A model generated the notes under the pieces. The model had not been told where the DNA came from. It was given only the letters and a program-made list of their open reading frames with translations, and searched no databases. The position numbers were made by a program, and so were the translations under genes. From contig NIVC01001658.1 of NCBI GenBank assembly GCA_002269645.1, forward strand, positions 62,001-126,000: 64,000 bases of DNA, read 5' to 3'. Shown in pieces: positions 3,421 to 37,000 of the stretch (positions are counted from its first letter, which is position 1; the number at the start of each line of letters is the position of its first letter). This stretch comes from Macrostomum lignano. Its lineage: Eukaryota.

Positions 3421-4053
3421 ATGCTTCGCGACTCATCATCCGATGACGATGACGACGATTGGGACTACTCAAAGGGTCCGCCGCCTGGCGCCATCTTCGC
3501 TCCGCCAGTGGCAGCCGCAGCGGCAGCCGCTCGCGGTGGTCTCGGCGCTGCAACGGCGGCTGCTGTTGCCGCCGCCGCTTCCAGCGGTGCCAGCGGTGCC
3601 GCACTGTCTTCGCCAGGCGGTTCCAGTTTGAGCTCTCACAGGCCTATCGCCGCTCAGCAGCATCCGCCTCCGCCATCGTTAAACATTGAAGCTCCAATTG
3701 TTCCGAGGCCAGCAGCTTCCATGGCAAATTCTTGTGCGCCATCGCCTATGCACCAACAGCAGCAGTCGGGCGGTGCGAATTCGCTATCATCGGCAACAGC
3801 AGCTCTCGCTTGCGTCGATCAACAGCAGCATAGCAGGCGACGCCAGACTAGTCCATCGCCCAGTATGCAGTCAGTTTACGTTGGCAACAATTCCAGATCG
3901 GCATCTGCAGCTGGTGACAATCCTGAGCAGCAATCGATTGACGAAGAGGCCGATAGGCGACAAAGACTGCTATTGTACGTCTTTGTTATGCGTTGCATTG
4001 CCTATCCGTTCAATGCTAAACAACCAACGGATTTGGCCAGACGACAGCTCAAG
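3421..4053 (+). CDS. CADPS: CAPS coding exon 1 ([10 protein letters not shown]...RRQLK)
   Basis: ATG 3421; acidic N-terminus resembles vertebrate MLDPSSSEEE; donor aag|GTTGGT at 4054, phase 0. Confidence 0.92.
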
Positions 4054-16000: not shown

Positions 16001-19000
16001 CTTTCTTCTCTACCCTTCTCTCTCTCTCTCGTCTGTCTTGAAACTTGAAATTCTTTGATCTACAGGCTAGAACGATTTGCATGCTAGCATATTTCTTTTG
16101 CTTCAAGCTACGACTTCTCAACTTTAATTTTCCATTTTCTTATTTGTGCTTTTTTTCTCCGCATGTCTTTACTGCGTTTCATTTTCTTTTGATGTTGATT
16201 TTGTCTTTCTATGATTGGCTAGATTCTATTATGTCTATCTTTAATTTTCCTTGCCATTGCTTTTCGCATCTCAACATCCCTCATCTCCCATCCCTCATCT
16301 CCGATCCCTCATCTCCCATCCCTCATCTCCCATCCCTCATCTCCGATCCCTCATCTCCCATCCCTCATCTCCGATCCCTCATCTCCCATCCCTCATCTCC
16401 GATCCCTCATCTCCCATCCCTCATCTCCCATCCCTCATCTCCGATCCCTCATCTCCCATCCCTCATCTCCCATCCCTCATCTCCGATCCCTCATCTCCCA
16501 TCCCTCATCTCCGATCCCTCATCTCCCATCCCTCATCTCCGATCCCTCATCTCCCATCCCTCATCTCCCATCCCTCATCTCCGATCCCTCATCTCCCATC
16601 CCTCATCTCCGATCCCTCATCTCCGATCCCTCATCTCCCATCCCTCATCTCCGATCCTTCATCTCCCATCCCTCATCTCCGATCCCTCATCTCCCATCCC
16701 TCATCTCCGATCCCTCATCTCCCATCCCTCATCTCCCATCCCTCATCTCCCATCCCTCATCTCTCCATCCCTCATCTCCCATCCCTCATCTCCCCATCCC
16801 TCATCTCTCCATCCCTCATCTCCCCATCCCTCATCTCCCATCCCTCATCTCCCATCCCTCATCTCCCATCCCTCATCTCCCATCCCTCATCTCCGATCCC
16901 TCATCTCCCATCCCTCATCTCCGATCCCTCATCTCCCATCCCTCATCTCCCCATCCCTCATCTCCCATCCCTCATCTCCCATCCCTCATCTCCCATCCCT
17001 CATCTCCCATCCCTCATCTCCCATCCCTCATCTCCCATCCCTCATCTCCCATCCCTCATCTCCCATCCCTCATCTCCCCATCCCTCATCTCCGATCCCTC
17101 ACCTCCTATCCCTCATCTCCGATCCCTCATCTCCCATCCCTCATCTCCCCATCCCTCATCTCCCATCCCTCATCTCCCATCCCTCATCTCTCCATCCCTC
17201 ATCTCCCATCCCTCATCTCCCATCCCTCATCTCCCATCCCTCATCTCTCCATCCCTCATCTCCCATCCCTCATCTCCCATCCCTCATCTCCCATCCCTCA
17301 TCTCTCCATCCCTCATCTCCCATCCCTCATCTCACCATCCCTCATCTCCCATCCCTCATCTCCCATCCCTCATCTCCCCATCCCTCATCTCCCATCCCTC
17401 ATCTCCCATCCCTCATCTCCCATCCCTCATCTCCCATCCCTCATCTCCCATCCCTCATCTCCCATCCCTCATCTCCGATCCCTCATCTCCCATCCCTCAT
17501 CTCCGATCCCTCATCTCCCATCCCTCATCTCCCCATCCCTCATCTCCCATCCCTCATCTCCCATCCCTCATCTCCCATCCCTCATCTCCCATCCCTCATC
17601 TCCCATCCCTCATCTCCCATCCCTCATCTCTCCATCCCTCATCTCCCATCCCTCATCTCCCATCCCTCATCTCTCATCCCTTATTTCTCATTCCTCAAAT
17701 TGTTGAAATATATACACGAAATGTTAGCACCACACGTATGATTATCAGTTTAAATGTAAAGGGCGGGTTTATTTAAAAATTTACATTAAAGCATCAGGGC
17801 AAATAGAAAGGCCTTAAGGCTGCATTTAAACTGGCCCGCTAGACGGCAAGGGAGAGTTTTGCTGAATATCGATTTTGCATAATGTCGCTGTTCGGCTAGA
17901 AAAAATCGAAAAAAATAGATAGGTTATTTCCTGAAATTCCTTCCTTCAGCAAAATGCCGGCAGAGATGGCCGCAGTGTAGACTTTTCCTCCGAATTCCAA
18001 ATTAATTCGTTTTCCGCTTTATCCTCTGTTTACAGCAGATTTTGATAAGCTTGAAATGACTCTAATGCATACAGTGTTTAAATGGCGGAGTTATCTGTTA
18101 GTTAAATAAAAGTACATCTGTCTGGTGGAATTCGGAGTTTAAAATAATAATGATATAATGTAATAAAGTACAATGGTAAGCATCGTTAAATCTGCGCAAT
18201 AACTGAGACAGGGGCGCCAAATTTAAGATCGAGGCGCCAATTTAAGATCGAGGCGCCAAATTTAAGATCAAGGCGCCAAATTTAAGATCGAGGCGCCAAA
18301 TTTAAGATCGAGACGCCAAATTTAGGATTGAGGCGCCAAATTTAGGATCGAGGCGCCAAATTAAAGATCGAGGCGCCAAATTTAAGATCAAGGCGCCAAA
18401 TTTAAGATCAAAGCGCCAAATTTGAGATCAAGGCGCTAAACTTGAGATTGAGGCGCTAAATTGAAGATTATGGCGCCAAATTTGAGGGTAAGGCGCCATG
18501 CCGCCAAATTTGAGGTTGAGACGCCAAATTTGAGGTTGAGACGCCAAATTTGAGGTTGAGACGCCAAATTTGAGGTTGAGACGCCAAATTTGAGGTTGAG
18601 ACGCCAAATTTGAGATCGAGGCGCCAAATTTGAAATCGAGGCGCCAAACTTGAGATCAAGGTGCAAAAATTGTGATTGAGGCGCCAACTTCGAGTTTAAG
18701 GCGCTAAATTTGAGGTTGAGGCGCCAAATTGTAGATTGAGGCGCTAAATTTTAAATCAAGGCGCCAAATTTAAGATTAAGGCGCCAAATTTAAGATCAAG
18801 GCGCCAAATTTAAGATTGAGGCGCTAACTTTAAAATAGGGGTGCCCGATCTAAATTATAAAATAAGGCGCCAACTCGGTAAGAACAACTTTAGGTGATTA
18901 CAGATTGCCACCCTAAACCCGCTCTTTCTACTCGCTCAAGGTTGTGGTCTCCGAGGTGAAGAATTTGAAATGCGTGCCCGGCAACCGCATCGTCTACTGC

Positions 19001-22000
19001 ACTATGGAGGTGGAGGGCGGCGAGAAACTGCAAACTGATCAAGCTGAGGCCTCCAGACCCATGTGGGACACGCAGGGCGATTTTTCAACATCGCATCCGT
19101 TGCCAATTGTTAAAGTGAAACTGTTCGCCGAGAATGCCAGAATGTTGAGCTTTGAGGATCGCGAATTGGGCAAGGTGAGGAGGTTTAAGGCGCAGTATTA
19201 CGGATTTTTGAGAGGATGAACGAAATGTAAAGGATTAGAGGGATGTACTTTAAAGTATGTTTGGTAGGAATAATTTGATATACTGTCAAAGAGATTCTAA
19301 GAGGTTTCTAAGAGGATCACTCTCAAACAGATAAAAGTTATTCTCAAAAAAGTGGTTAAGGATTTTCTCAGGGATTATTGATCTTCTCAGAGGGATAACA
19401 TACTCGTATTTTTCGAATGGATTAAAAGTGTTCTCAACGGTGTTAAGGATGTTCTTAGTAAGATAAAGGGTGTTTTCGACGGGATTAATGGTGTTCTTAA
19501 AGTGTCAAGGATGTTCTGAACGGGATTAAGGATGTTTTTAAAGGAATTAAGAGTGTTCTCAACGGGATTAAAGGTGTTCTCAAAGGGATTAAAGGTGTTC
19601 TCAAAGGAATTAAGGGTGTTCTCAACGCGATTAAAGGTGTTCTCAACGCGATTAAAGGTGTTCTCAAAGGAATTAAGGGTGTTCTCAACGGGATTAAAGG
19701 TGTTCTCAACGCGATTAAAGGTGTTCTCAAAGGAATTAAGGGTGTTCTCAACGCGATTAAAGGTGTTCTCAACGCGATTAAAGGTGTTCTCAACGCGATT
19801 AAAGGTGTTCTCAAAGGAATTAAGGGTGTTCTCAACGGGATTAAAGGTGTTCTCAACGCGATTAAAGGTGTTCTCAAAGGAATTAAGGGTGTTCTCAACG
19901 CGATTAAAGGTGTTCTCAACGCGATTAAAGGTGTTCTCAAAGGAATTAAGGGTGTTCTCAACGGGATTAAAGGTGTTCTCAATGGGATTAAAGGTGTTCT
20001 CAATGGGATAAAAGGTGTTCTCAACGGGATTAAAGGTGTTCTCAAAGGAATTAATGGTACTTTAAAAGTATTAGGTGGTTGTGGAATAAAATGTTTATGG
20101 AATTTTAAATGGAATAAAGTGTTTTATAGGAGATTACATGCGTTTTAGAAGCATTGACAGATGCTACATTGTAATTAGAATGTACTTATAACTTGCATCA
20201 ATGATTAAGCGCGGCCTGATAAATGAATCGCGGCCACTTGTTTATCTGACTCTCCCCCGCCGCAGGTGCTGATCAGGCCCACCTGCACCACGGCAAAGGG
20301 TCCCGAGTGGTACCGCATGACCACCAGCAAAGGCTGCCCGGATGATTTGCGCATCAAAATTGTTGTTCGAATGGAGAAGCCATCAAATTTGAAGCACTGC
20401 GGCTGGCTGTGGGCCGTGGGAAAATCTGTGTTTAAGAAGTGGAAAAAGCGCTACATGTGTCTCATTCAGGTAATGCGCTTGCCTTGGTAATGTATTGGTG
20501 TCTCAATTATAGTACACGTAAAATGGTTGTTGAGCTGTGGATATTGTGGTGCGTGTAACATTATATAACCATTACGGTATACAATGATCTATCATTGTTT
20601 CTGATTTGTACTGTGTACAGTGCTTTTATCTGTGTATTTACCTTTGATATTGTGCGTGTATGGTGTACAGTACTTTAATGTGTTAACTAACTTTTGAAAT
20701 ATGAAATAATTACAGTAGTTACATAGAAAAGATTGTAATGTAAACTGTACAATATACTGTAAACTGTACACTATAATGTAAACTGTACACTATAATGTAA
20801 ACTGTACACTATAATGTAAACTGTACACTATAATGTAAACTGTACACTATAATGTAAACTGTACACTATAATTTCAACTGTACACTATAATGTAAACTGT
20901 ACACTATAATGTAAACTGTACACTATAATGTCAACTGTACACTATAATGTAAACTGTACACTATAATGTAAACTGTACACTATAATGTAAACTGTATGCA
21001 AAGTGTTACTAATTTATAATGCATATATAATGTGCTAGTTAAACAATTACTACTGAGCAGCTAAATTTCAACAAACTCATTTGTTTATCTTCACCCAAAG
21101 GAGATGAAAAAAACAGTTTCTTAGCAAACTTAACTGGTAAGATTCCATATCTATAATTATCTTCATTGACTTTTAATTAATGGTTTAACATGTTTCCTTT
21201 GTATTATTGATAAACTAGATGAATGAATGCTTTTTGTTAAACTTTTTTCATTGCACTTCGAGCGGAACGTTGACTTTGGTAGATTTAACACAACTTTTGA
21301 ATATGAGAAATCATTTATAATTGCAAATAGCCCGTAAACTGATTGCGTATAGGACAATCTGAACTTTAATTATTAATTTTTATAAAATTTGATATCAAAA
21401 CTGCAGCATGCACTACTGTTCTATGATTGAAGATCATTTTTGCACGTGTAGCCACTATTAATAAATGAATCTTTCTCTCACATTGCAACAAATTTTTTAA
21501 TTAGTAAAACTTTTTCATTAGTTTGCATTGCATCATTCTGAAAATGGTAATTTAAAATTGCTCTTGTACATGCTAAATTCTATTTGTAAACTTAGACAAC
21601 TTATTATTTTATACAATTTTTTGCCAACAATTTTGTTCGGTCTTTAGTAGCATTTATTAATTGATTCCTTTAATTTTTAATAGATAGAAGAGCTGGAAGA
21701 AAATATTCGATTTTTGTTACTATTATGCGCTATAAGTAGTATGGCTAGAATCTTACGCTGATATTTAAAATAAGTGAAACTAGAGGTTTCGTATCGTGTT
21801 TGTCAACTGAGCGCCGAAATTTTAACATCTTTCTTAGAAAGGGCGATTTTTGGCTCCAAAATAGCATACTTTCAGGTTAGCGCCAAAACTGTATAGCGTC
21901 AGGCTGGCGCCAAAACTGTATGGCGTCAAGTTGGCGCTAAAACAGCATAACTTCAGATTAGCGCCAAAACATTGTACTCGTAGCGTCAGGCTAACGCCAA

Positions 22001-24191
22001 AACAGCATAGCGTCAGGCTGGCGCCAAAACATTTTAGCGTCAGGTTGGCGCCAAAACATTTTAGCATCAGGCTGGCGCCGAAAAGGTGTAGCGTCAGGTT
22101 GGCGCCAAAATGTTATAGAGTCAGGTAGGCGCCAAAACAGTATACATGTAGTGTCAGGTTGGCGCCAAACAGTAGTATACATGTAGTGTCAGACTGGCGC
22201 CAAAACTTACTAGTCAGATTGGCGCCAAAACTTACTAGTCAGATTGGCGCCAAAACTTACTAGTCAGATTGGCGCCAAAACTTACTAGTCAGATTGGCGC
22301 CAAAACTTACTAGTCAGATTGGCGCCAAAACTTACTAGTCAGATTGGCGCCAAAACTTACTAGTCAGATTGGCGCCAAAACTTACTAGTCAGATTGGCGC
22401 CAAAACTTACTAGTCAGATTGGCGCCAAAACTTACTAGTCAGATTGGCGCCAAAGTTATAGTATCAGATTAGCGCTAAAATAGTGTAGTTTTTTATTATT
22501 CTGCACCAAAAGCAGAATTTCAATGCCCGACTGTCTTTAACTCGCCAGTTCGAATTTCTCAACCCCTCTGCAGGTCAGTCAGTACAATTTCGTCATGGCA
22601 TCGTTTCGAGAGAAGAAATCCGAACCCATGGAGGTGACCAGCCTCGGCGACTACACCGTTGACTACCTGATCGAGACTCCACCTGAGCTGCTGGCCGAAG
22701 CTGCCAGCGGTAAATTCTGCTTCTTCAACACCGTACGAGAGGGAGATTGCGTCACCTACGCTAGCGAAGACGACACGGACAGGCAGTTGTGGGTGCAAGC
22801 AATCTACAGAGCTACTGGCCAGACTCACAAGCCTGTAGCTCCATCGCAACCGGCTGCTCAGAGGATCTCCAGCACCCAGATGCACAAGATGGCTGGCGAA
22901 GCTGATAAGGCGAAGCGAGCCGGTCTGGAGGAGTTCCTGCACGCTGATCCATGCCAGTGCGATCATGTGGCGCTGTTCCGCAGGCTGCAGGTTCTCACGT
23001 TAGACTATCGATTGAACGATCCTTACACTAGTCTTGGTTGGTTTAGTCCCGGTCAAGTCTTTGTCCTAGACGAGTACTGCGCCAGGTACGGAGTTCGAGG
23101 CTGCCAGCGTCACGTGTTCTACATGGAAGATTTGTTAAACGCCGCCGATAAAGGATTTATGATTGATCCGACTTTGATTCATTATAGCTTCGCGTTCTGC
23201 GCCTCCCACGTGCATGGCAATCGGTTAGTTATGTATATATTATGCTTGCTAACTACTGTCAGTAGCTGTCTAGGGCGGCAATTCGGCCAAGTTTACATCT
23301 GTGGCGCCAAACTCACCTCTGTGGCGCCCAAGTTCTCCTCTTTAGCGCCAAACTCACCTCTGTGGCGCCAAATTTACATCTGTGGCGCCAAACTCACCTC
23401 TGTGGCGCCAAACTCGCCTCTGTGGCACCAACTTCTCTTTAGCGCTAAACTCACCTCTGTGGCGCCAAATTTACATCTGTGGCGCCAAACTCACCTCTGT
23501 GGCGCCAAATTTGCCTCTCTGTCGCCGAATTTATCTTTGTGGCGCTAAATTTACCTCTTTGGCGCCGAATTAAACTCTGTAGTGCCAAGTTCTCCTCTCT
23601 GCCAAGTTCTTCTCTGTGGCGCCAAAAACACTTATGCGGCGCTAAATAAACCTGAGGGACACTAAACTCACCTAAGGGCGCCAAAGTCACCCGAGAGGCG
23701 CCAAATTATCTGAAGTTCTCTAATGAAACGGCAAAAAGCAGACTGATAAAACAAATCCAATTTCAAATTTTAGCCCGGACGGCATTGGCACGGTCCTCTA
23801 CGACGAACGAGTTCGATTCGAAGATGTCAAACGACGCCTAAAAGAGTTGTTGATGCGACAAATCACCGAATTCCGATATTATTTTCCTTTCGGCCGACCG
23901 GAGGGCGCGCTCAAAGGGACTTTGTCGCTGTTGGAAAGGGTGATTAACTGGGCTTGTTTTTTTATATAGCAAGTCTGCCGATATGTATCGAAAAATATCT
24001 TTATCAATGTACATTTTTTAAAAACTAATACTAATACAAACAGGTGCTGATGAAGGACATTGTTACTCCGGTGGACGCCGACGAAGTGCGGAAAGTTGTG
24101 CGCAGCTGTCTTGAAGAGGCGGCCAGATTGAATTACAGCAGGATTGCCGACTTCTCCAATATTGAAGGTCTGTCTGTCTGTCTATCTGTCC

Positions 24192-24232
<41 letters not shown>

Positions 24233-24280
24233 CCTGTGTGTGTGTGTGTCTGTCTGTCTGTCTTTCTGTCTGTCTGTCTA

Positions 24281-24339
<59 letters not shown>

Positions 24340-24340
24340 T

Positions 24341-24381
<41 letters not shown>

Positions 24382-24433
24382 CTGTGTGTGTGTGTCTGTC
24401 TGTCTGTCTTTCTGTCTGTCTGTCTATCTGTCC

Positions 24434-24488
<55 letters not shown>

Positions 24489-24576
24489 CGTATGTCTGTG
24501 TGTGTCTGTCTGTGTGTGTCTGTCTGTCTGTGTGTGTGTGTGTGTCTGTCTGTCTTTCTGTCTGTCTGTCTGTCTA

Positions 24577-24617
<41 letters not shown>

Positions 24618-24664
24618 GTCGGTCTGTCTGTCTGTCTGTTTGTCTATCCGTCTGTCTGTGTGTT

Positions 24665-24733
<69 letters not shown>

Positions 24734-24790
24734 CTGTGTGTGTCTGTCTGTCTGTGTGTGTGCGTGTCTGTCTTTCTGTCTGTCTGTCTA

Positions 24791-24843
<53 letters not shown>

Positions 24844-24847
24844 GTCG

Positions 24848-24889
<42 letters not shown>

Positions 24890-24892
24890 TTA

Positions 24893-24933
<41 letters not shown>

Positions 24934-24934
24934 A

Positions 24935-24969
<35 letters not shown>

Positions 24970-24970
24970 A

Positions 24971-25015
<45 letters not shown>

Positions 25016-28000
25016 GTCTGTCTGTCTGTCTGTCTTAGTGTCTGTCCATCTGTCTTAGTTGTTCTGACAGTATTAACAACCATAGCCGCCATCTAATTGC
25101 CTCCAAACCAATCCAGTATTGACCACCCAATTGTCGAGCCGGTCGCCCAGCATAAGGAGTGTTTATAACCCAAGTTAGTTGGTTCCAAATTCTCTCCGTT
25201 TATTGACTGTATTGACCACTATCAATATTCCATGGGGGAGATTCTTTGTTTACCTTGGTGTGGAAGGTTCTGGTTTTACTTTTAAATGTCCGTCATTAGT
25301 ATCTCTTCTGTTTTAACATTTCACGCAAAATCTTTTTCACCTGTCGCAGAAATTGTCCAATCTGATGTTCCTACGGAGAAGAAGCTGGAGAGCATTGTAC
25401 ACCTAGCCGAGATGTGCATTGAAGTTTTGCAACAGAACGAGGAACATCATTCCGAGGTAATGTGGTGCTTTATTTACAAAACGAATTTTATTGACAAGAG
25501 AAACAATGAACTTTTGTGCAAAGAAGCTCACCCTCTAAATATAATTTGTCCTTTAATTTTTTCTCTCAAATTTTAGGAGTGCAGAGAGGTAAACGCGAAA
25601 TCCTCCACAAAATCTTTAATATTTCTTTTCTATTTTTTCTCTATTTTTGGATTATAGTGTGATATACATACTACTATATTACTACTGTTAATAATGTAAG
25701 ACATGGTTATTAGTCTATGGCCTTAACTGCATGCAATGTTTTGGTCAGTTATATGTCCATGGGGTCATTTCTAAACTGGTATTAAGACTCGCTGTTCATT
25801 ATTGTCTATGGCACATAATAGGGAATGCACGCTAGGCACGCTGGAAGTGTAAGTTGTCAAAATCAAAGTGTTAATTAATACCTAAATTGTCTATGGCAAT
25901 CAAGAAGGCTCTTTCCCGTTTGCCATTCCCATATCTAGTTCGAGCCAACCGACAGACAGTAGTCTATGGTCTGAAACTAACCAATCACAAGACAGAATGG
26001 CCATAGACACTTTAACTGCTTCACATGTTACAGCCAAGGACAACTCAAGTGAAAGGACGGGAGACTAGCAACGTTTCTTACAGAAAGTTAAGGAGGCTGC
26101 TTTTCGCCGAAAAATACACTATGGCGATAGGAACTTCTCACGTTTTTCATAATAAAATTGTTATTGCTTTTGATGGGAGGAAGACCCTATGTTCATCTTT
26201 TGATATGTTGTGCCTTTCTTATGGCTCTATTGATATTTATAGGGAAAAACATATGATGAGCATAAGATCTGCCTTCTATCAAAAGCAATAACAATTTTAA
26301 TATGAAAAAAACGTGAAAAGTTGTCCTTAATTACAACATTGAGCCCGGAATTCGCTTGCCCAACTTTCTCAAACTGTGTGCTCTCACGGACCCATTTTGT
26401 GTCATTAGACAATTTACGAAAATCCTCAACGGATTGATTCTCAATTGCTCATTTGGCATGGAGAATACTATATTAAAGGATTAACGCAAATGTTTGTTAC
26501 AAAGCATTTTAAAATCCTCAGATTTGTAGACCAATACTAAAGATAAAGATTATAATTTACGCGGAAAAATAGTTAACACAAGTTAAAAAGTATTAGTAAA
26601 CATAAGATACTTTCTGCGCAGTGCTTTCACTCTATGTATATACTACTCACTTCAATCGCGCAAAAGTAGTCTACAATCTGTATATAACTTTTTGAGAGAA
26701 AACGTTTAATTATGAGTGCAAATTTTTATACACTATTTACTAGTAGTTTCTGGGCACTTCATTGCGCTATTTTTTCTAATTATTTCATATATGCAAACAC
26801 TACTTCCTTGCAAGTCGATAGAAATGTCAATCAAGCTGATAGAAATGTCAATCAAGTTGATCAAAATGTCAATCAAGTTGATAAAAATTTCAATCAAGCT
26901 GATAAAATGTCAATCAAACTAATAAAATGTCAATCAAGTTGATAAAAATGTCAACCAAGCTGATAAAAATGTCAATCAAGCTGATAAAAATGTCAATCAA
27001 GTTGATAAAATGTCAATCAAGTTGATAAAATGTCAATCAAGTTGATAAAATGTCAATCAAGTTGATAAAATGTCAATCAAGTTGATAAAAATATCAATCA
27101 AACTAATAAAATGTCAATCAAGTTGATAAAATGTCAATCAAGTTGATAAAAATGTCAATCAAGTTGATAAAATGTCAATCAAGTTGATAAAATGTCAATC
27201 AAGTTGATAAAAATATCAATCAAACTAATAAAATGTCAATCAAGTTGATAAAAATGTCAATCAAGTTGATAAAAATATCAATCAAGTTGATAAAATGTCA
27301 ATCAAGTTGATAAAATGTCAATCAAGTTGATAAAAATGTCAATCAAGTTGATAAAATGTCAATCAAGTTGATAAAAATATCAATCAAACTAATAAAATGT
27401 CAATCAAGTTGATAAAAATGTCAATCAAGTTGATAAAAATATCAATCAAGTTGATAAAATGTCAATCAAGTTGATAAAATGTCAATCAAGTTGATAAAAA
27501 TGTCAATCAAGTTGATAAAATGTCAATCAAGTTGATAAAATGTCAATCAAGTTGATAAAAATATCAATCAAACTAATAAAATGTCAATCAAACTAATAAA
27601 AATTTCAATCAAGCTGATAAAATGTCAATCAATCTGATAAAAATGTCAATCAAACTAATAAAATGTCAATCAAGTTGATAAAAATGTCAATCAAGTTGAT
27701 AAAAATATCAATCAAACTAATAAAATGTCAATCAAACTAATAAAAATGTCAATCAAGCTGATAAAAATGTCAATCAAGCTGATAAAAATGTCAATCAAGC
27801 TGATAAAAATGTCAATCAAGTTGATAAAATGTCAATCAAGTTGATAAAATGTCAATCAAGTTGATAAAAATATCAATCAAGTTGATAAAATGTCAATCAA
27901 GTTGATAAAATGTCAATCAAGTTGATAAAACTGTCAATCAAGTTGATAAAATGTCAATCAAGTTGATAAAATGTCAATCAAGTTGATAAAAATGTTAATC

Positions 28001-31000
28001 AAGTTAATAAAAATGTCAATCAAGTTGATAAAAATATCAATCAAACTAATAAAATGTCAATCAAACTAATAAAAATGTCAATCAAGCTGATAAAAATGTC
28101 AATCAAGCTGATAAAAATGTCAATCAAGTTGATAAAATGTCAATCAAGTTGATAAAACTGTCAATCAAGTTGATAAAATGTCAATCAAGTTGATAAAATG
28201 TCAATCAAGTTGATAAAAATGTTAATCAAGTTAATAAAAATGTCAATCAAGTTGATAAAAATATCAATCAAACTAATAAAATGTCAATCAAACTAATAAA
28301 AATGTCAATCAAGCTGATAAAAATGTCAATCAAGCTGATAAAAATGTCAATCAAGCTGATAAAAATGTCAATCAAGTTAATAAAATGTCAATCAAGTTGA
28401 TAAAATGTCAATCAAGTTGATAAAATGTCAATCAAGTTGATAAAATGTCAATCAAGCTGATAAAAATATCAATCAAACTAATAAAATGTCAATCAAACTA
28501 ATAAAAATGTCAATCAAGTTGATAAAATGTCAATCAAGTTGATAAAAATGTCAATCAAGTTGATAAAAATGTCAATCAAGCTGATAAAAATGTCAATCAA
28601 GCTGATAAAAATGTCAATCAAGTTGATAAAATGTCAATCAAGTTGATAAAATGTCAATCAAGTTGATAAAAATATCAATCAAACTAATAAAATGTCAATC
28701 AAACTAATAAAAATTTCAATCAAGCTGATAAAATGTCAATCAATCTGATAAAAATGTCAATCAAACTAATAAAATGTCAATCAAGTTGATAAAAATGTCA
28801 ATCAAGTTGATAAAAATATCAATCAAACTAATAAAATGTCAATCAAACTAATAAAAATGTCAATCAAGCTGATAAAAATGTCAATCAAGCTGATAAAAAT
28901 GTCAATCAAGCTGATAAAATGTCAATCAAGTTGATAAAAATGTCAATCAAGTTGATAAAATGTCAATCAAGTTGATAAAATGTCAATCAAGTTGATAAAA
29001 TGTCAATCAAGCTGATAAAAATGTCAATCAAGCTGATAAAAATGTCAATCAAGCTGATAAAAATGTCAATCAAGTTGATAAAATGTCAATCAAGTTGATA
29101 AAATGTCAATCAAGTTGATAAAAATATCAATCAAGTTGATAAAATGTCAATCAAGTTGATAAAATGTCAATCAAGTTGATAAAAATGTCAATCAAGTTGA
29201 TAAAATGTCAATCAAGTTGATAAAATGTCAATCAATCTGATAAAAATGTCAATCAAACTAATAAAATGTCAATCAAGTTGATAAAAATGTCAATCAAGTT
29301 GATAAAAATATCAATCAAACTAATAAAATGTCAATCAAACTAATAAAAATTTCAATCAAGCTGATAAAATGTCAATCAATCTGATAAAAATGTCAATAAA
29401 ACTAATAAAATGTCAATCAAGTTGATAAAAATGTCAATCAAGTTGATAAAAATATCAATCAAACTAATAAAATGTCAATCAAACTAATAAAAATATCAAT
29501 CAAGCTGATAAAATTGTCAATCAAGCTGATAAAAATGTCAATCAAGCTGATAAAAATGTCAATCAAGTTGATAAAATGTCAATCAAGTTGATAAAATGTC
29601 AATCAAGTTGATAAAAATATCAATCAAGTTGATAAAATGTCAATCAAGTTGATAAAATGTCAATCAAGTTGATAAAAATGTCAATTAAGTTGATAAAATG
29701 TCAATCAAGTTGATAAAATGTCTATCAAGTTGATAAAAATGTTAATCAAGTTAATAAAAATGTCAATCAAGTTGATAAAAATATCAATCAAACTAATAAA
29801 ATGTCAATCAAACTAATAAAAATGTCAATCAAGCTGATAAAAATGTCAATCAAGCTGATAAAAATGTCAATCAAGCTGATAAAAATGTCAATCAAGTTGA
29901 TAAAATGTCAATCAAGTTGATAAAAATGTCAATCAAGTTAATAAAAATGTCAATCAAGTTGATAAAAATATCAATCAAACTAATAAAATGTCAATCAAAC
30001 TAATAAAAATGTCAATCAAGCTGATAAAATGTCAATCAAGCTGATAAAAATGTCAATCAAACTAATAAAATGTCAATCAAGTTGATAAAAATGTCAATCA
30101 AGTTGATAAAAATATCAATCAAACTAATAAAATGTCAATCAAACTAATAAAAATGTCAATCAAGTGGATAAAAATGTCAATCAAGTTGATAAATATATCA
30201 ATCAAACTAAAAAAATTTCAATCAAACTAATAAAAATGTCAATCAAGCTGATAAAAATGTCAATCAAGCTGATAAAAATGTCAATCAAGCTGATAAAAAT
30301 GTCAATCAAGTTAATAAAATGTCAATCAAGTTGATAAAATGTCAATCAAGTTGATAAAATGTCAATCAAGTTGATAAAATGTCAATCAAGTTGATAAAAT
30401 GTCAATCAAGTTGATAAAAATATCAATCAAACTAATAAAATGTCAATCAAACTAATAAAAATGTCAATCAAGTTGATAAAATGTCAATCAAGTTGATAAA
30501 AATGTCAATCAAGTTGATAAAAATATCAATCAAGTTGATAAAATGTCAATCAAGTTGATAAAATGTCAATCAAGTTGATAAAATGTCAATCAAGTTGATA
30601 AAAATGTCAATCAAGTTGATAAAAATATCAATCAAGTTGATAAAATGTCAATCAAGTTGATAAAATGTCAATCAAGTTGATAAAAATGTCAATCAAGTTG
30701 ATAAAATGTCAATCAAGTTGATAAAATGTCAATCAAGTTGATAAAAATGTTAATCAAGTTGATATAAATATCAATCAAACTAATAAAATGTCAATCAAGT
30801 TGATAAAATGTCAATCAAGTTGATAAAAATGTCAATCAAGTTGATAAAATGTCAATCAAGTTGATAAAATGTCAATCAAGTTGATAAAAATATCAATCAA
30901 ACTAATAAAATGTCAATCAAACTAATAAAAATTTCAATCAAGCTGATAAAATGTCAATCAATCTGATAAAAATGTCAATCAAACTAATAAAATGTCAATC

Positions 31001-34000
31001 AAGTTGATAAAAATGTCAATCAAGTTGATAAAAATATCAATCAAACTAATAAAATGTCAATCAAACTAATAAAAATGTCAATCAAGCTGATAAAAATGTC
31101 AATCAAGCTGATAAAAATGTCAATCAAGCTGATAAAAATGTCAATCAAGTTGATAAAATGTCAATCAAGTTGATAAAATGTCAATCAAGTTGATAAAAAT
31201 ATCAATCAAGTTGATAAAATGTCAATCAAGTTGATAAAATGTCAATCAAGTTGATAAAACTGTCAATCAAGTTGATAAAATGTCAATCAAGTTGATAAAA
31301 TGTCAATCAAGTTGATAAAAATGTTAATCAAGTTAATAAAAATGTCAATCAAGTTGATAAAAATATCAATCAAACTAATAAAATGTCAATCAAACTAATA
31401 AAAATGTCAATCAAGCTGATAAAAATGTCAATCAAGCTGATAAAAATGTCAATCAAGCTGATAAAAATGTCAATCAAGTTAATAAAATGTCAATCAAGTT
31501 GATAAAATGTCAATCAAGTTGATAAAATGTCAATCAAGTTGATAAAATGTCAATCAAGCTGATAAAAATATCAATCAAACTAATAAAATGTCAATCAAAC
31601 TAATAAAAATGTCAATCAAGTTGATAAAATGTCAATCAAGTTGATAAAAATGTCAATCAAGTTGATAAAAATGTCAATCAAGCTGATAAAAATGTCAATC
31701 AAGCTGATAAAAATGTCAATCAAGTTGATAAAATGTCAATCAAGTTGATAAAATGTCAATCAAGTTGATAAAAATATCAATCAAACTAATAAAATGTCAA
31801 TCAAACTAATAAAAATTTCAATCAAGCTGATAAAATGTCAATCAATCTGATAAAAATGTCAATCAAACTAATAAAATGTCAATCAAGTTGATAAAAATGT
31901 CAATCAAGTTGATAAAAATATCAATCAAACTAATAAAATGTCAATCAAACTAATAAAATGTCAATCAAACTAATAAAAATGTCAATCAAGCTGATAAAAA
32001 TGTCAATCAAGCTGATAAAATGTCAATCAAGTTGATAAAAATGTCAATCAAGTTGATAAAATGTCAATCAAGTTGATAAAATGTCAATCAAGTTGATAAA
32101 ATGTCAATCAAGCTGATAAAAATGTCAATCAAGCTGATAAAAATGTCAATCAAGCTGATAAAAATGTCAATCAAGTTGATAAAATGTCAATCAAGTTGAT
32201 AAAATGTCAATCAAGTTGATAAAAATATCAATCAAGTTGATAAAATGTCAATCAAGTTGATAAAATGTCAATCAAGTTGATAAAAATGTCAATCAAGTTG
32301 ATAAAATGTCAATCAAGTTGATAAAATGTCAATCAATCTGATAAAAATGTCAATCAAACTAATAAAATGTCAATCAAGTTGATAAAAATGTCAATCAAGT
32401 TGATAAAAATATCAATCAAACTAATAAAATGTCAATCAAACTAATAAAAATTTCAATCAAGCTGATAAAATGTCAATCAATCTGATAAAAATGTCAATAA
32501 AACTAATAAAATGTCAATCAAGTTGATAAAAATGTCAATCAAGTTGATAAAAATATCAATCAAACTAATAAAATGTCAATCAAACTAATAAAAATATCAA
32601 TCAAGCTGATAAAATTGTCAATCAAGCTGATAAAAATGTCAATCAAGCTGATAAAAATGTCAATCAAGTTGATAAAATGTCAATCAAGTTGATAAAATGT
32701 CAATCAAGTTGATAAAAATATCAATCAAGTTGATAAAATGTCAATCAAGTTGATAAAATGTCAATCAAGTTGATAAAAATGTCAATTAAGTTGATAAAAT
32801 GTCAATCAAGTTGATAAAATGTCTATCAAGTTGATAAAAATGTTAATCAAGTTAATAAAAATGTCAATCAAGTTGATAAAAATATCAATCAAACTAATAA
32901 AATGTCAATCAAACTAATAAAAATGTCAATCAAGCTGATAAAAATGTCAATCAAGCTGATAAAAATGTCAATCAAGCTGATAAAAATGTCAATCAAGTTG
33001 ATAAAATGTCAATCAAGTTGATAAAAATGTCAATCAAGTTAATAAAAATGTCAATCAAGTTGATAAAAATATCAATCAAACTAATAAAATGTCAATCAAA
33101 CTAATAAAAATGTCAATCAAGCTGATAAAATGTCAATCAAGCTGATAAAAATGTCAATCAAACTAATAAAATGTCAATCAAGTTGATAAAAATGTCAATC
33201 AAGTTGATAAAAATATCAATCAAACTAATAAAATGTCAATCAAACTAATAAAAATGTCAATCAAGTGGATAAAAATGTCAATCAAGTTGATAAATATATC
33301 AATCAAACTAAAAAAATTTCAATCAAACTAATAAAAATGTCAATCAAGCTGATAAAAATGTCAATCAAGCTGATAAAAATGTCAATCAAGCTGATAAAAA
33401 TGTCAATCAAGTTAATAAAATGTCAATCAAGTTGATAAAATGTCAATCAAGTTGATAAAATGTCAATCAAGTTGATAAAATGTCAATCAAGTTGATAAAA
33501 TGTCAATCAAGTTGATAAAAATATCAATCAAACTAATAAAATGTCAATCAAACTAATAAAAATGTCAATCAAGTTGATAAAATGTCAATCAAGTTGATAA
33601 AAATGTCAATCAAGTTGATAAAAATATCAATCAAGTTGATAAAATGTCAATCAAGTTGATAAAATGTCAATCAAGTTGATAAAATGTCAATCAAGTTGAT
33701 AAAAATGTCAATCAAGTTGATAAAAATATCAATCAAGTTGATAAAATGTCAATCAAGTTGATAAAATGTCAATCAAGTTGATAAAAATGTCAATCAAGTT
33801 GATAAAATGTCAATCAAGTTGATAAAATGTCAATCAAGTTGATAAAAATGTTAATCAAGTTGATATAAATATCAATCAAACTAATAAAATGTCAATCAAA
33901 CTGATAAAAATGTCAATCAAGCTGATAAAAATATCAATCAAACTAATAAAATGTCAATCAAACTAATAAAAATGTCAATTAAGTTGATAAAATGTCAATC

Positions 34001-37000
34001 AAGTTGATAAAAATGTCAATCAAGTTTATAAAATGTCAATCAAGTACATAAAATGTCAATCAAGTTGATAGAAATGTCAATCAAGTTGATAAAATGTCAA
34101 TCAAGCTGATAAAAATATCAATCAAGTTGATAAAAATATCAATCAAACTAATAAAATGTCAATCAAACTGATAAAAATGTCAATCAAGCTGATAAAAATA
34201 TCAATCAAACTAATAAAATGTCAATCAAACTAATAAAAATGTCAATCAAGCTGATAAAAATGTCAATCAAGCTGATAAAAATGTCAATCAAGTTGATAAA
34301 ATGTCAATCAAACTAATAAAAATGTCAATCAAGCTGATAAAAATGTCAATCAAGTTGATAGAAAAATCAATCAAGCTGATAAAATGTCAATCAAACTCAA
34401 AATGTCAATCAAACTCATAAAATGTCAATCAAACTCATAAAATGTCAATCCAACTGATAAAAATGTCAATCGAGCTGATAAAAACATCTATCCAGTTGAT
34501 AAAATCCAGTGATCCACTTAATTGGGCTTTTGATAACTTGATTAACTACCTGTGCATGCTAACAAATGAGTAGACTGAATCTTTTTCATCTCGATAAAAT
34601 AGCTATTTCTCTTTATTTTTTCCTAAATTAACAAGCGCGCAAAAGAAGTAAAGATTTTTCATTAATTTGCAGAGTTTTATATTTATCAATGGAGATTTCA
34701 TTCCCTTAAGTCCTAATGAGTTGAAGAGTGAGCTAAATTGGCCAGCTTATGAAACTTTACTAACAACTTCAATAAAATATTTCTATTCCTTGATTTCAGG
34801 CATTCGCCTGGTTCTCAGACCTTCTAGTTGAGCACGCTGAAATATTCTGGGCCAAATTCGCGGTCGATATGCTCACGGTGCTTGAGAACCAGCCGCCGGA
34901 CGTGTGGGACTCGTTCCCTCTGTTCCAACTGCTCAATGACTACCTTAGATCTGATGGTGAGCCTTGCGGTGACTCATGCTGCACTCCACTCTACTTTACT
35001 CTACTCCACTCTACTCTACTCCACTCTATTCTACTCTATTCTACTCTACTCCACTCTACTCCACTCTACTCTACTCTACTCTACTCTACTTCACTCTACT
35101 CCACTCTATTCTACTCTACTCTACTCTACTCCACTCTACTCTACTCTACTCTACTCCACTCTACTCTACTCCACTCTACTCTACTCTACTCTACTCTACT
35201 CCACTCTACTCTACTCCACTCTACTCTACTCTACTCCACTCTACTCCACTCTACTCTACTCTACTCTACTCTACTCCACTCTACTCTACTCCACTCTACT
35301 CCACTCTACTCTACTCTACTCTACTCTACTTCACTCTACTCCACTCTATTCTACTCTACTCTACTCCACTCTACTCTACTCCACTCTACTCTACTCTACT
35401 CCACTCTACTCCACTTAACTCTACTCTACTCTACTCTACTCCACTCTACTCTACTCCACTCTACTCTACTCCACTCTACTCTACTCTACTCTACTTCACT
35501 CTACTCCACTCTATTCTACTCTACTCTACTCTACTCTACTCCACTCTACTCTACTCCACTCTACTATACTCCACTCTACTCTACTCCACTCTACTCTACT
35601 CCACTCTACTATACTCCACTCTACTCTACTTCACTCTACTCCACTCTATTCTACTCTACTCCACTCTACTCTACTCCACTCTACTCTACTCCACTCTACT
35701 CTACTCCACTCTACTCTACTCTACTCCACTCTACTCTACTCTACTCTACTCTACTTCACTCTACTCCACTCTATTCTACTCTACTCCACTCTATTCTACT
35801 CTACTCCACTCTACTCTACTCCACTCTACTCTACTCCACTCTACTCTACTCTACTCCACTCTACTCTACTCTACTCTACTCTACTTCACTCTACTCCACT
35901 CTATTCTACTCTACTCTACTCCACTCTACTCTACTCCACTCTACTATACTTCCTCTACTCTATACTACTCTACTTTACAGTACTCCTCACTCTACCTAAA
36001 TTTACCCCAATTCTCCACCAACCCTAACAGCGAACCTTCGCAGCGGCAAATTCCACCAGCAACTGCGCGACATCTTTGCTCCCCAAGTGGTTCGCTATGT
36101 GGACCTGATGGAGTCCTCCATCGCCCAGTCCATACACAAAGGCTTCGAGAAGGAGCGCTGGACTTTAAAGGGTGCCGGCTGCTCCAGCAGCGAAGACCTG
36201 CTGTGGAAACTGGAAGCTCTGCAGTCGTTCATATCGGATCTGCACTGGCCAGACCCCGTGTTTGCTGAGCACCTGGACAACCGGCTCAAGCTCATGGCTG
36301 CCGACATGCTTGAAGCGGCTGGCAAGAGGACCGTGTCCGCATTTGAGACCATCATGAAACGGACTAGCAAGAGTACAGATTTTCTGCTGCCTGTGGAAGT
36401 GTGCGTCATGTTGAATACATGCGTTAGTTTGAAGGCTAGCGTGTTTAAACTCTGCACCATGGGCGCTGGGGAGAATATGGTGAGTGACATTGTACTTGGG
36501 AAATTGTGGATTAAACTGTTTTTTTTACATTTCCGAATGAATTTAGGTGTAAAATGGTAGATTAACTTTTTTAGTGAATTGTAGAGTGACATTATAACCG
36601 TGTAGAGTGACATTAAAAACTCGTAGAATGGCATAAACATGTAGTGACATTATAAACATGCGGAGTGACATTATAAACTCGTAGAATGACATAACATGTA
36701 GTGACACTATAAACATGTAAAGTGACACTATAAACATGTAGAGTGACATTATACACATGCGGAGTGACATTATAAACTCGTAGAATGACATAACATGTAG
36801 TGACACTATAAACATGTAAAGTGACACTATAAACATGTAGAGTGACATTATACACATGCGGAGTGACATTATAAACACGTTAGAGTGACATTATAAACAC
36901 GTTAGAGTGACACTATAAGCATGTGGAGTGACACTATAAGCATGTGGAGTGACACTATAAACATGTGGAGTGACATTATAAACACGTTAGAGTGACACTA

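What the first reader, a model, noticed from the sequence alone, without database searches (positions are those of the whole stretch)
25577..25588. Hidden 12-nt microexon (ECRE) at the known variable site of CAPS
Seen: a strong pyrimidine tract and AG, then GAG TGC AGA GAG, then GTAAAC; phase 0/0; it sits between EEHHSE and AFAWFSD. Established (from recall): vertebrate CAPS proteins carry short variable inserts at this junction (GRE in CAPS2, PHVDKGE in CAPS1), and neural microexons are controlled by SRRM3/4-type eMIC factors. Inference: an invertebrate counterpart that gene predictors would miss, suggesting ancient or convergent microexon regulation of vesicle priming.
Basis: partly seen in the sequence, partly recalled or inferred. 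Interest (0 to 1): 0.7.

Follow-up and report, generated by a model that had tools for sequence, protein, structure and literature searches.

The report
Conserved 12-base microexon in flatworm CAPS
The 12 bases are very probably a real mini-exon of a flatworm gene for the vesicle-priming protein CAPS, because a related flatworm has one at the same spot in an RNA-derived gene model; mini-exons at this site are already annotated in many animals.

Summary
GAGTGCAGAGAG (25577-25588) lies 120 nt after CAPS exon 10, behind a strong pyrimidine tract and AG, before GTAAAC, in phase 0/0.

It is the only in-frame AG-3n-GT candidate of this quality on either strand of the 64-kb window. Simulation gives a chance expectation of 0.001-0.007 for the non-repeat part of the intron.

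The gene is a complete 15-exon CAPS/unc-31 gene of a macrostomid flatworm. In Macrostomum lignano, two loci of the closest gene group carry a 12-nt exon, GAAGGAAAAGAG (EGKE), 122-124 nt after exon 10. One RNA-seq-derived GenBank model (PAA69029.1) includes it and another (PAA88459.1) skips it. The rest of the intron does not align.

The same junction carries short cassette exons in many bilaterians:
- GKE/GRE in vertebrates.
- 12-nt exons in molluscs, a brachiopod and a crab.
- The published C. elegans unc-31 microexon.

So this is a real, probably alternative microexon and a new member of a known kind. SRRM/eMIC control is untested, and the typical UGC motif near the 3' splice site is absent. 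I found no RNA data from the window's own species.

The parts
3421..40726 (+). Complete CAPS/unc-31 (calcium-dependent secretion activator) gene: 15 coding exons, 1379 aa without the microexon and 1383 aa with it.
   Evidence: tblastn with M. lignano CAPS proteins, then splice-site-exact reconstruction giving an uninterrupted ORF. Pfam domains C2_CAPS, PH and MUN.
25350..25456 (+). Exon 10 (...[36 protein letters not shown]), donor GAG|GTAATG.
25457..25576 (+). Short 120-nt intron upstream of the microexon, with a 52-nt AG-exclusion zone before the acceptor.
   Evidence: The orthologous interval is 122-124 nt in M. lignano.
25536..25549 (+). Conserved intronic block TAAATATAATTTGT, 28-41 nt upstream of the acceptor; probably the branch-point region (CUAAA).
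   Evidence: 13 of 14 bases match M. lignano (TAAATACAATTTGT) in an intron that otherwise does not align. The branch-point role is inferred.
25550..25576 (+). Pyrimidine tract with a UCUCUC run, plus the acceptor: cctttaattttttctctcaaattttAG.
   Evidence: Acceptor score 7.07 bits, 3rd of 15 in the gene.
25577..25588 (+). 12-nt microexon GAG TGC AGA GAG (ECRE), phase 0/0.
   Evidence: The M. lignano counterpart GAAGGAAAAGAG (EGKE) has the same length, phase and position and is present in the transcript-derived protein PAA69029.1.
25589..25594 (+). Donor GTAAAC, of moderate strength with no G at +5; M. lignano has GTAATT or GTAAAT.
25614..25649 (+). U-rich stretch 26-61 nt downstream of the microexon; candidate splicing enhancer of the ELAV/TIA type.
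   Evidence: A U-rich tract sits at a similar distance in M. lignano. The downstream flank has the highest cross-species local alignment score of the 11 donor-side flanks compared (score 15, z = 3.0). Function is inferred.
25728..25733 (+). UGCAUG (Rbfox-type motif) 140 nt downstream of the microexon.
   Evidence: It is absent from M. lignano, so this is weak and may be chance.
26811..34504 (+). 7.7-kb satellite with a 21-nt unit (about 375 copies) that fills most of the intron between the microexon and exon 11.
   Evidence: GC content 23%.
34800..34956 (+). Exon 11 ([24 protein letters not shown]...LRSD), acceptor tttcag|GCA.

Best explanation
25577-25588 is a genuine cassette microexon of a macrostomid flatworm CAPS/unc-31 gene.

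Proposed splicing mechanism (inferred): the exon is recognised by intron definition across the short 120-nt upstream intron. The signals are a conserved branch region, a long AG-exclusion zone and a strong pyrimidine tract. The moderate GTAAAC donor is probably helped by a conserved U-rich region just downstream.

Effect on the protein: inclusion adds four residues (ECRE; EGKE in M. lignano) at the C-terminal end of the long helix ...[13 protein letters not shown]. This is directly before the kink to the [14 protein letters not shown] helix, inside the MUN region of CAPS. The match to the rat DAMH crystal construct places it in the SNARE-binding domain, as that domain is described in the literature. 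The added turn lengthens the helix and shifts the helix corner, which should tune vesicle priming in the neurons that include the exon.

Shown: the sequence anatomy, its statistical rarity, conservation of the exon and its flanks in M. lignano, and inclusion and skipping in M. lignano RNA-derived models.

Inferred: splicing in the window's own species, neuron-type specificity, the regulators and the functional effect.
For: - Anatomy and statistics.
- Positive control for the scorer.
- Gene identity and exon structure.
- M. lignano counterpart: the protein PAA69029.1 reads EEHHSE-EGKE-AFAWFSD, while PAA88459.1 from a near-identical gene copy lacks the insert.
- Both M. lignano loci carry ttttag|GAAGGAAAAGAG|gtaa 122-124 nt after exon 10.
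- The GenBank annotation of Mlig_3_7 was built from RNA-seq with StringTie, TACO and TransDecoder (PMC5730564).
- Introns of the two species do not otherwise align. The microexon flanks give the top local alignment scores among the 24 intron-flank comparisons made (alignment).
- Structure models put the insert at the end of a helix just before a 1-3-residue break. In chimpanzee CADPS with GKE the helix runs 181-212 with the break at 213. In M. lignano PAA69029.1 the helix runs 374-406 with the break at 407-409. pLDDT dips locally in both.
- The region matches the rat CAPS1 DAMH crystal construct 6a68.
- The same junction carries alternative inserts in many phyla.
Against: - I could reach no RNA data from the window's own species. 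No transcript fragment from a close relative other than M. lignano turned up.
- The M. lignano paralogue group Mlig000167 (locus L002) and the trematode Paragonimus have no comparable candidate in this intron.
- Three of the four M. lignano models of the closest gene group omit the exon. Inclusion may therefore be a minority event, and reads from near-identical gene copies can be cross-assigned.
- Only 8 of 12 bases and 2 of 4 residues match M. lignano.
- The donor has no G at +5.
Confidence: 0.85

Rival explanations
1. It is a chance pseudo-exon: intronic sequence that happens to look like an acceptor and a donor 12 nt apart and is never spliced into mRNA.
For: Decoy splice sites are common in introns. 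The donor is only average. There are no RNA data for this species. No such exon is seen in the M. lignano paralogue or in Paragonimus.
Against: It is the only candidate of this quality in 128 kb of sequence, and simulation gives 0.001-0.007. A 12-nt exon of the same phase and position, with splice sites, is kept in M. lignano although the rest of the intron does not align, and it appears in an RNA-derived model there.
Confidence: 0.07
2. It is a constitutive exon in this species, always included, and gene models simply miss it because it is so small.
For: The acceptor is among the strongest in the gene, and the upstream intron is short and typical. Aligners and predictors often drop 12-nt exons, which could explain the M. 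lignano models without it.
Against: M. lignano has RNA-derived models with and without the exon from near-identical gene copies. At this junction nearly every taxon with several annotated isoforms has both forms. The flanking intron is better conserved than flanks of constitutive exons, which is typical of regulated exons.
Confidence: 0.2
3. It is a neuronal microexon whose inclusion depends on an SRRM3/4-type eMIC factor (Srrm234).
For: It shares several features listed for fly eMIC exons in PMC8797185: a long AG-exclusion zone (52 nt here, 75 nt in M. lignano), a long pyrimidine tract with UCUC, a near-consensus branch motif and a weak-to-average donor. The Lingula exon at the same junction has UGC at -10.
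Against: The hallmark UGC close to the 3' splice site is missing in both Macrostomum species; the nearest is at -60 in the window and there is none within 120 nt in M. lignano. The nematode counterpart module is driven by EXC-7/ELAV and MBL-1 through the downstream intron together with PRP-40 (PMC12287369). I did not check whether macrostomids have an eMIC-bearing Srrm234.
Confidence: 0.25

Closest known systems
Macrostomum lignano CAPS gene group Mlig001216 (PAA69029.1, BOX15_Mlig001216g1): 12-nt exon EGKE
   Same: Same gene, same phase-0 junction (EEHHSE|AFAWFSD) and same 12-nt length. The distance from exon 10 is 122-124 nt against 120 nt here. Both have a ttttAG acceptor and a GTAA donor, the pattern E-x-K/R-E, a conserved TAAATAyAATTTGT block upstream and a U-rich tract downstream.
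   Different: 4 of 12 bases and residues 2-3 differ (CR against GK). The M. lignano downstream intron has YGCY motifs at +31, +63 and +76 that the window lacks. The intron after the exon is about 1.4-2 kb there, against 9.2 kb here, which is mostly satellite.
C. elegans unc-31 microexon (Choudhary et al., EMBO Rep 2025, PMC12287369)
   Same: Same gene family. The published RT-PCR primers translate to IRVTEF and LSDHSEI, which flank this very junction in nematode CAPS. It is alternatively spliced by neuron type and belongs to a MUN-domain microexon group that is co-regulated by EXC-7/ELAV and MBL-1 and is PRP-40-dependent like nearly all C. elegans microexons; the downstream-intron sites and the PRP-40 recruitment model were worked out on unc-13.
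   Different: I could not obtain its size or sequence. A 12-nt candidate QLRG, 65 nt after the upstream exon in C. auriculariae, is only a prediction. Shared regulators are not shown. The window has the downstream U-rich tract but no nearby YGCY.
Vertebrate CADPS/CADPS2 9-nt microexon (GKE in CAPS1, GRE in CAPS2 and lamprey)
   Same: Same junction between EEHH[AS]E and AFAWW. The residues are similar: G-K/R-E against E-[GC]-[KR]-E. The insert sits at the same helix end in the structure models.
   Different: 9 nt rather than 12 nt. Homology or convergence cannot be decided from 3-4 residues.
12-nt microexon of lophotrochozoans and decapods at this junction
   Same: Same junction, same 12-nt length, and both with-exon and without-exon isoforms annotated. 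Examples: AFRS (Haliotis, Petrolisthes), AFSS/AFAS (heterobranch snails), AFVT (oysters), QFVA (scallops), AYQA (chiton) and EFRA (Lingula). The Lingula exon GAGTTTCGAGCG was confirmed in the genome with AG/GT and shares 8 of 12 bases with the window.
   Different: Those exons have an aromatic residue at position 2 and a small residue at position 4; the flatworm has C or G and E. The Lingula exon lies 1355 nt from the upstream exon and has UGC at -10.
eMIC (SRRM3/4, Srrm234)-dependent neuronal microexons of flies and mammals (PMC8797185)
   Same: Size class, a synaptic gene, a long AG-exclusion zone and a strong pyrimidine tract.
   Different: No UGC near the acceptor. Cadps is not among the four exons reported as shared in position between the fly and mouse eMIC programmes.

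Membership tests
CAPS / UNC-31 (calcium-dependent secretion activator) | Domain order C2_CAPS, PH, MUN (MHD1/DAMH) | tested here: met
   Pfam scan of the reconstructed 1383-aa protein: C2_CAPS 1.4e-50, PH 3e-07, MUN 1.5e-96. The region matches the rat CAPS1 DAMH crystal construct 6a68 at 5e-35.
CAPS / UNC-31 (calcium-dependent secretion activator) | Full-length similarity to named CAPS proteins | tested here: met
   75-78% identity to M. lignano CAPS and about 60% to mollusc, annelid and vertebrate CAPS.
Cassette microexon (30 nt or less, frame-preserving) | Length of 30 nt or less, a multiple of 3, open in the frame set by the flanking exons | tested here: met
   12 nt, phase 0/0, ECRE, no stop codon.
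Cassette microexon (30 nt or less, frame-preserving) | Canonical acceptor and donor of a quality comparable to the gene's real sites | tested here: met
   Acceptor ranks 3rd of 15 and donor 8th of 15. It is unique in the window.
Cassette microexon (30 nt or less, frame-preserving) | Presence in mature mRNA | tested here: inconclusive
   Met for the M. lignano counterpart: the RNA-seq-derived model PAA69029.1 contains EGKE. No RNA data from the window's own species were reachable.
Cassette microexon (30 nt or less, frame-preserving) | Skipped in some transcripts (alternative use) | tested here: inconclusive
   M. lignano PAA88459.1 skips an intact copy of the exon. Reads from near-identical gene copies may be cross-assigned, and the window's species is untested.
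Cassette microexon (30 nt or less, frame-preserving) | Conservation of the exon and its flanks in related species | tested here: met
   Same position, length and phase in M. lignano, and the flanks have the best intron alignment scores. Absent in the paralogue Mlig000167 and in Paragonimus.
eMIC (SRRM3/4, Srrm234)-dependent microexon | UGC motif close to the 3' splice site | tested here: not met
   Nearest UGC is at -60 in the window, and there is none within 120 nt in M. lignano. Lingula has one at -10.
eMIC (SRRM3/4, Srrm234)-dependent microexon | Long AG-exclusion zone and a long pyrimidine tract with UCUC | tested here: met
   AG-exclusion zone of 52 nt (window) and 75 nt (M. lignano); UCUCUC is present in the window's tract only.
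eMIC (SRRM3/4, Srrm234)-dependent microexon | Inclusion lost when the eMIC factor is removed; neural-specific inclusion | not testable with these tools
   Needs knock-down and tissue RNA.
MUN-domain microexon group regulated by ELAV/EXC-7 and MBL-1 (with PRP-40), C. elegans (PMC12287369) | Microexon in an unc-13 or unc-31 family gene; for unc-31, at this junction | tested here: met
   The primers for the unc-31 microexon encode IRVTEF and LSDHSEI, which flank EEHHGE|AFAWFSD.
MUN-domain microexon group regulated by ELAV/EXC-7 and MBL-1 (with PRP-40), C. elegans (PMC12287369) | ELAV-type (U-rich) and MBL-type (YGCY) elements in the downstream intron | tested here: inconclusive
   A U-rich tract is present and conserved at +26 to +61. 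YGCY is present in M. lignano at +31, +63 and +76 but absent from the first 200 nt downstream in the window.
MUN-domain microexon group regulated by ELAV/EXC-7 and MBL-1 (with PRP-40), C. elegans (PMC12287369) | [quoted passage not shown] | not testable with these tools
   Needs genetics or knock-down and cell-type RNA.

The most novel reading that the evidence does not exclude
The CAPS exon-10/11 junction holds a single ancestral bilaterian microexon. On this reading it has been kept for more than 500 million years in flatworms (E[GC][KR]E), vertebrates (G[KR]E), molluscs, brachiopods and decapods (x-F/Y-x-x, 12 nt) and nematodes. The splicing regulators would have been exchanged between lineages: a UGC/eMIC-type signal in Lingula, and a U-rich ELAV-type signal in Macrostomum and nematodes. 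That would make it one of very few microexons shared by position across all major bilaterian clades. It would also be a natural system for studying regulator turnover on a fixed exon.
Probability: 0.3. Interest if true: 0.55.

Novelty: new member of a known kind. Interest (0 to 1): 0.35.

Why it matters
CAPS primes dense-core and synaptic vesicles, and the insert sits in the domain that the literature describes as its SNARE-binding domain. A four-residue switch there is therefore a plausible way for neurons to tune secretion.

Published comparisons find almost no microexons shared in position between phyla: four between fly and mouse (PMC8797185). This junction is occupied by short cassette exons in flatworms, molluscs, a brachiopod, decapods, nematodes, echinoderms, hemichordates and vertebrates, so it is a useful case for asking whether microexons are ancient or arise again and again at hotspots.

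There is also a practical point. Three of the four M. lignano models of the closest gene group omit the exon, so microexon-aware annotation is needed in these genomes. M. lignano is transgenic-capable, so the function can be tested.

Tried and rejected
- Exact look-up of a window ORF spanning exon 10 found no record, so the source genome is not in the collection. P0121 is not on record either.
- The first protein search (93 aa) returned only fragments of 161 aa or less and no flatworm. The tool appears to list only targets up to about 1.7 times the query length; the maxima were 161, 1348 and 494 aa for queries of 93, 770 and 289 aa. The 289-aa search, meant to catch Macrostomum transcript fragments, found none.
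- The M. lignano paralogue Mlig000167 (L002) has no comparable candidate and no intron similarity. The trematode Paragonimus westermani (L007) has no convincing candidate either.
- L001 comes from an unidentified species in which exons 9-11 are fused, so it has no intron at this site and is uninformative.
- 'PHVDKGE' is absent from the paper library and from the roughly 480 CAPS sequences on file when I searched.
- I considered a recursive (zero-length) splice site and rejected it. Joining exon 10 (…GAG) to GAGTGC does not regenerate a GT donor, whereas a 12-nt exon with its own donor fits.
- A supplement search for the size of the C. elegans unc-31 microexon found nothing.
- The Rfam scan found nothing and the bacterial promoter scan was irrelevant.
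- A literature search for Macrostomum plus microexon gave nothing relevant.
Full report
**1. The observation**

The sequence is as described.
- Exon 10 of the gene ends ...CAT CAT TCC GAG at 25456 and is followed by GTAATG.
- 120 nt later comes ...cctttaattttttctctcaaattttAG.
- Then GAG TGC AGA GAG (25577-25588, ECRE), then GTAAAC.
- The next coding exon starts at 34800 with GCA TTC GCC TGG (AFAW), so the phase is 0/0.

**2. Is it more than chance?**

I scored every AG-(3n)-GT stretch of 3-30 nt without an in-frame stop, using a generic acceptor and donor matrix.
- In the 9.3-kb intron there are only 20 such candidates. This one scores 10.0 bits in total and the next scores 1.8.
- Across both strands of the whole window there are 3062 candidates, and none other reaches both its acceptor score (7.07) and donor score (2.94).
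- Most of the intron is a 21-nt satellite (26811-34504). I simulated the 1649-nt unique part with a first-order Markov model. 0.1% of simulations reached both scores and 0.7% reached the sum.
- Against the gene's own 14 acceptors and 14 donors, the candidate ranks 3rd and 8th of 15. Its donor equals the constitutive exon-10 donor.
- The same scorer puts the annotated microexons first in the matching introns of M. lignano and Lingula, which serves as a positive control.

**3. The gene and the organism**

The window carries a complete CAPS/unc-31 gene.
- It has 15 exons from 3421 to 40726 and one uninterrupted ORF of 1379 aa.
- Its domains are C2_CAPS, PH and MUN.
- The closest named proteins are from the free-living flatworm Macrostomum lignano: 75-78% identity overall and 92% around the junction. 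Exon DNA is 72-86% identical and the introns do not align.
- The window is therefore from a macrostomid related to M. lignano but distinct from it.
- Nearly every intron is dominated by tandem arrays. This fits the repeat-rich genome described for M. lignano (PMC5730564).

**4. The decisive comparison**

M. lignano has two CAPS gene groups.

The more distant group (Mlig000167, locus L002) has no comparable candidate in this intron.

The closer group (Mlig001216) is present in several near-identical copies.
- Its protein PAA69029.1 reads ...EEHHSE-EGKE-AFAWFSD..., while PAA88459.1 and two UniRef models read EEHHSE-AFAWFSD.
- In both genomic loci I fetched, the intron after exon 10 contains ...tatcttttctacctatcaatcatcgttttag|GAAGGAAAAGAG|gtaa.... 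It lies 124 nt (L004) and 122 nt (L005) after the exon. The window's distance is 120 nt.
- Length, phase and position are the same. 8 of 12 bases match, and the peptide pattern is E-x-K/R-E.
- The GenBank annotation of that assembly was derived from RNA-seq, using StringTie and TACO on mapped reads plus a de novo transcriptome, with TransDecoder ORFs (PMC5730564). The EGKE model is therefore transcript evidence of inclusion, and the other model is evidence of skipping.
- One caveat applies: reads can be cross-assigned between near-identical gene copies.

**5. Flanking conservation**

The intron otherwise does not align between the species.
- A block TAAATAyAATTTGT about 30-40 nt upstream of the acceptor is conserved at 13 of 14 bases. 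A U-rich tract lies 25-60 nt downstream in both species.
- I compared 94-97 nt of intron flank next to each orthologous splice site. The microexon's downstream flank has the best local alignment score of the 11 donor-side flanks (15, z = 3.0).
- Its upstream flank has the best score of the 13 acceptor-side flanks (12, z = 1.9).
- The effect is modest, but it points the way expected for a regulated exon.

**6. How it probably works**

*Splicing (inferred)*
- A 12-nt exon cannot be defined across the exon. The short upstream intron, the conserved branch region, the long AG-exclusion zone (52 nt here, 75 nt in M. lignano) and the strong pyrimidine tract all fit intron definition.
- The donor GAG|GTAAAC pairs with U1 over AG|GUAA but has no G at +5.
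- The conserved U-rich stretch downstream is where ELAV/TIA-type proteins act.
- In C. elegans, MUN-domain microexons, including that of unc-31, depend on EXC-7 (ELAV) and MBL-1. For unc-13 the paper showed that these bind the downstream intron, and it proposes that they recruit the U1 component PRP-40 (PMC12287369).
- The eMIC signature is incomplete. There is no UGC within 50 nt of the acceptor in either Macrostomum species, whereas the Lingula exon at this junction has UGC at -10.

*Protein*
- The junction lies in the MUN/DAMH region and matches the rat CAPS1 crystal construct 6a68. The literature describes this as the SNARE-binding domain.
- AlphaFold models of a chimpanzee CADPS fragment with GKE, and of M. 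lignano PAA69029.1 with EGKE, place the insert at the C-terminal end of a long helix. A 1-3-residue break and the AFAW helix follow directly. Confidence dips locally in both models.
- The exon thus adds about one helical turn at a helix corner. The effect on priming is inferred, not shown.

**7. Comparison with what is known**

About 270 CAPS sequences from many phyla were inspected at this junction. The phase-0 junction EEHH[AS]E|AFAW carries annotated inserts very widely.
- Vertebrates: GKE in CAPS1 (chimpanzee, shark, snake, frog, fish); GRE in CAPS2 of a bird and in lamprey.
- 12-nt exons: AFRS in abalone and a porcelain crab, AFSS/AFAS in heterobranch snails, AFVT in oysters, QFVA in scallops, AYQA in a chiton, EFRA in Lingula.
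- 18-27-nt exons in echinoderms, hemichordates and oysters.
- Longer cassettes in octopus, nemerteans and insects.
- Where several isoforms are annotated, both forms, with and without the insert, are nearly always present.
- The Lingula exon was verified in the genome as gtag|GAGTTTCGAGCG|gtgagt.
- The RT-PCR primers published for the C. elegans unc-31 microexon translate to IRVTEF and LSDHSEI. In nematode CAPS these peptides sit on either side of this junction.
- That paper also states that MUN-domain genes carry microexons in worm, fly and mouse.

The finding is therefore a flatworm member of a known class at a known hotspot, not a new kind of element.

**8. Ancient or convergent?**

The evidence cannot settle this.
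- For common ancestry: the same junction is used, the 12-nt length recurs in lophotrochozoans and decapods, and the flatworm peptide (E-G-K-E) resembles the vertebrate one (G-K-E).
- For repeated origin: the inserted sequences are very diverse, several cassettes can sit in one intron, the exon is absent from the M. lignano paralogue and from Paragonimus, and there is no intron at all in rotifers or in the species of L001.
- Published work favours high turnover of such exons.

**9. Verdict**

| Question | Assessment |
|---|---|
| Observation | Confirmed |
| Regulatory link to SRRM/eMIC | Unsupported |
| Claim of novelty | Overstated |
| Confidence that the exon is spliced in this species | About 0.85 |
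| Confidence that it is alternative | About 0.7 |
| Novelty | New member of a known kind |
| Interest | 0.35 |

Noticed in passing
window 24168-25055: A (GTCT)n microsatellite of about 225 units begins at the first base of the intron after exon 9 (exon ends 24167). The 5' splice site GTCTGT is therefore itself the first unit and a half of the repeat.
   Followed up: partly
window 26811-34504, 34983-35995, 36580-38642 and other introns: Almost every CAPS intron is dominated by a different tandem array. The largest is a 7.7-kb, 21-nt-unit, 23% GC satellite. A 10-nt ACTCTACTCT array starts 27 nt after exon 11, and there is a 21/64-nt array of 2 kb.
   Followed up: partly
window 15114-15137 (start of exon 4): The segment NRKFPKFV at the start of exon 4 corresponds to NRKYPRFAV. 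That stretch is present in M. lignano PAA51579.1 but replaced by AM in UniRef A0A1I8FTN6. This may be a second small alternative segment or an alternative acceptor.
   Followed up: no
L004 18695-18987 and 3185-4890, compared with window exons 1-2 and 8-9: Intron positions differ between the window and M. lignano. Exons 8 and 9 (104-nt intron here) and exons 1 and 2 appear contiguous in M. lignano, while exon 2 is split there by an intron of about 1.1 kb.
   Followed up: no
M. lignano proteins P0121 and P0249, junction of exons 9 and 10: Two UniRef models carry extra residues (GKTR, or GKTRVRTPFIVSGSNRIVYILCKVT) between ...NIE and IIQSDD. This is either intron read-through or another small alternative segment one junction upstream of the microexon.
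   Followed up: no
window about 53540-62930, + strand: A second gene downstream of CAPS has exon fragments that weakly match DUF4140 and DUF4139, individually below the Pfam cut-offs.
   Followed up: partly
L006 12419-12430 (Caenorhabditis auriculariae unc-31 locus): A 12-nt candidate, tttttag|CAACTCCGCGGC|gtaagttt (QLRG), lies 65 nt after the exon ending EEHHGE. It is a possible nematode counterpart of the microexon, with no RNA support here.
   Followed up: partly
L003 27908-27919 (Lingula anatina): The annotated EFRA microexon has UGC 10 nt upstream of its acceptor, the motif typical of eMIC-dependent exons. The Macrostomum exons lack it, which hints at different regulators acting on exons at the same junction.
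   Followed up: partly
oyster, octopus and Ptychodera CAPS isoforms (P0276, P0272 and P0319 clusters): Several cassettes share this one intron. Oysters have AFVT plus three alternative 27-nt exons (RVKANIVNQ, KSKTKNIHQ, KNMANNFNQ), and octopus and Ptychodera each have two cassettes used alone or together.
   Followed up: no
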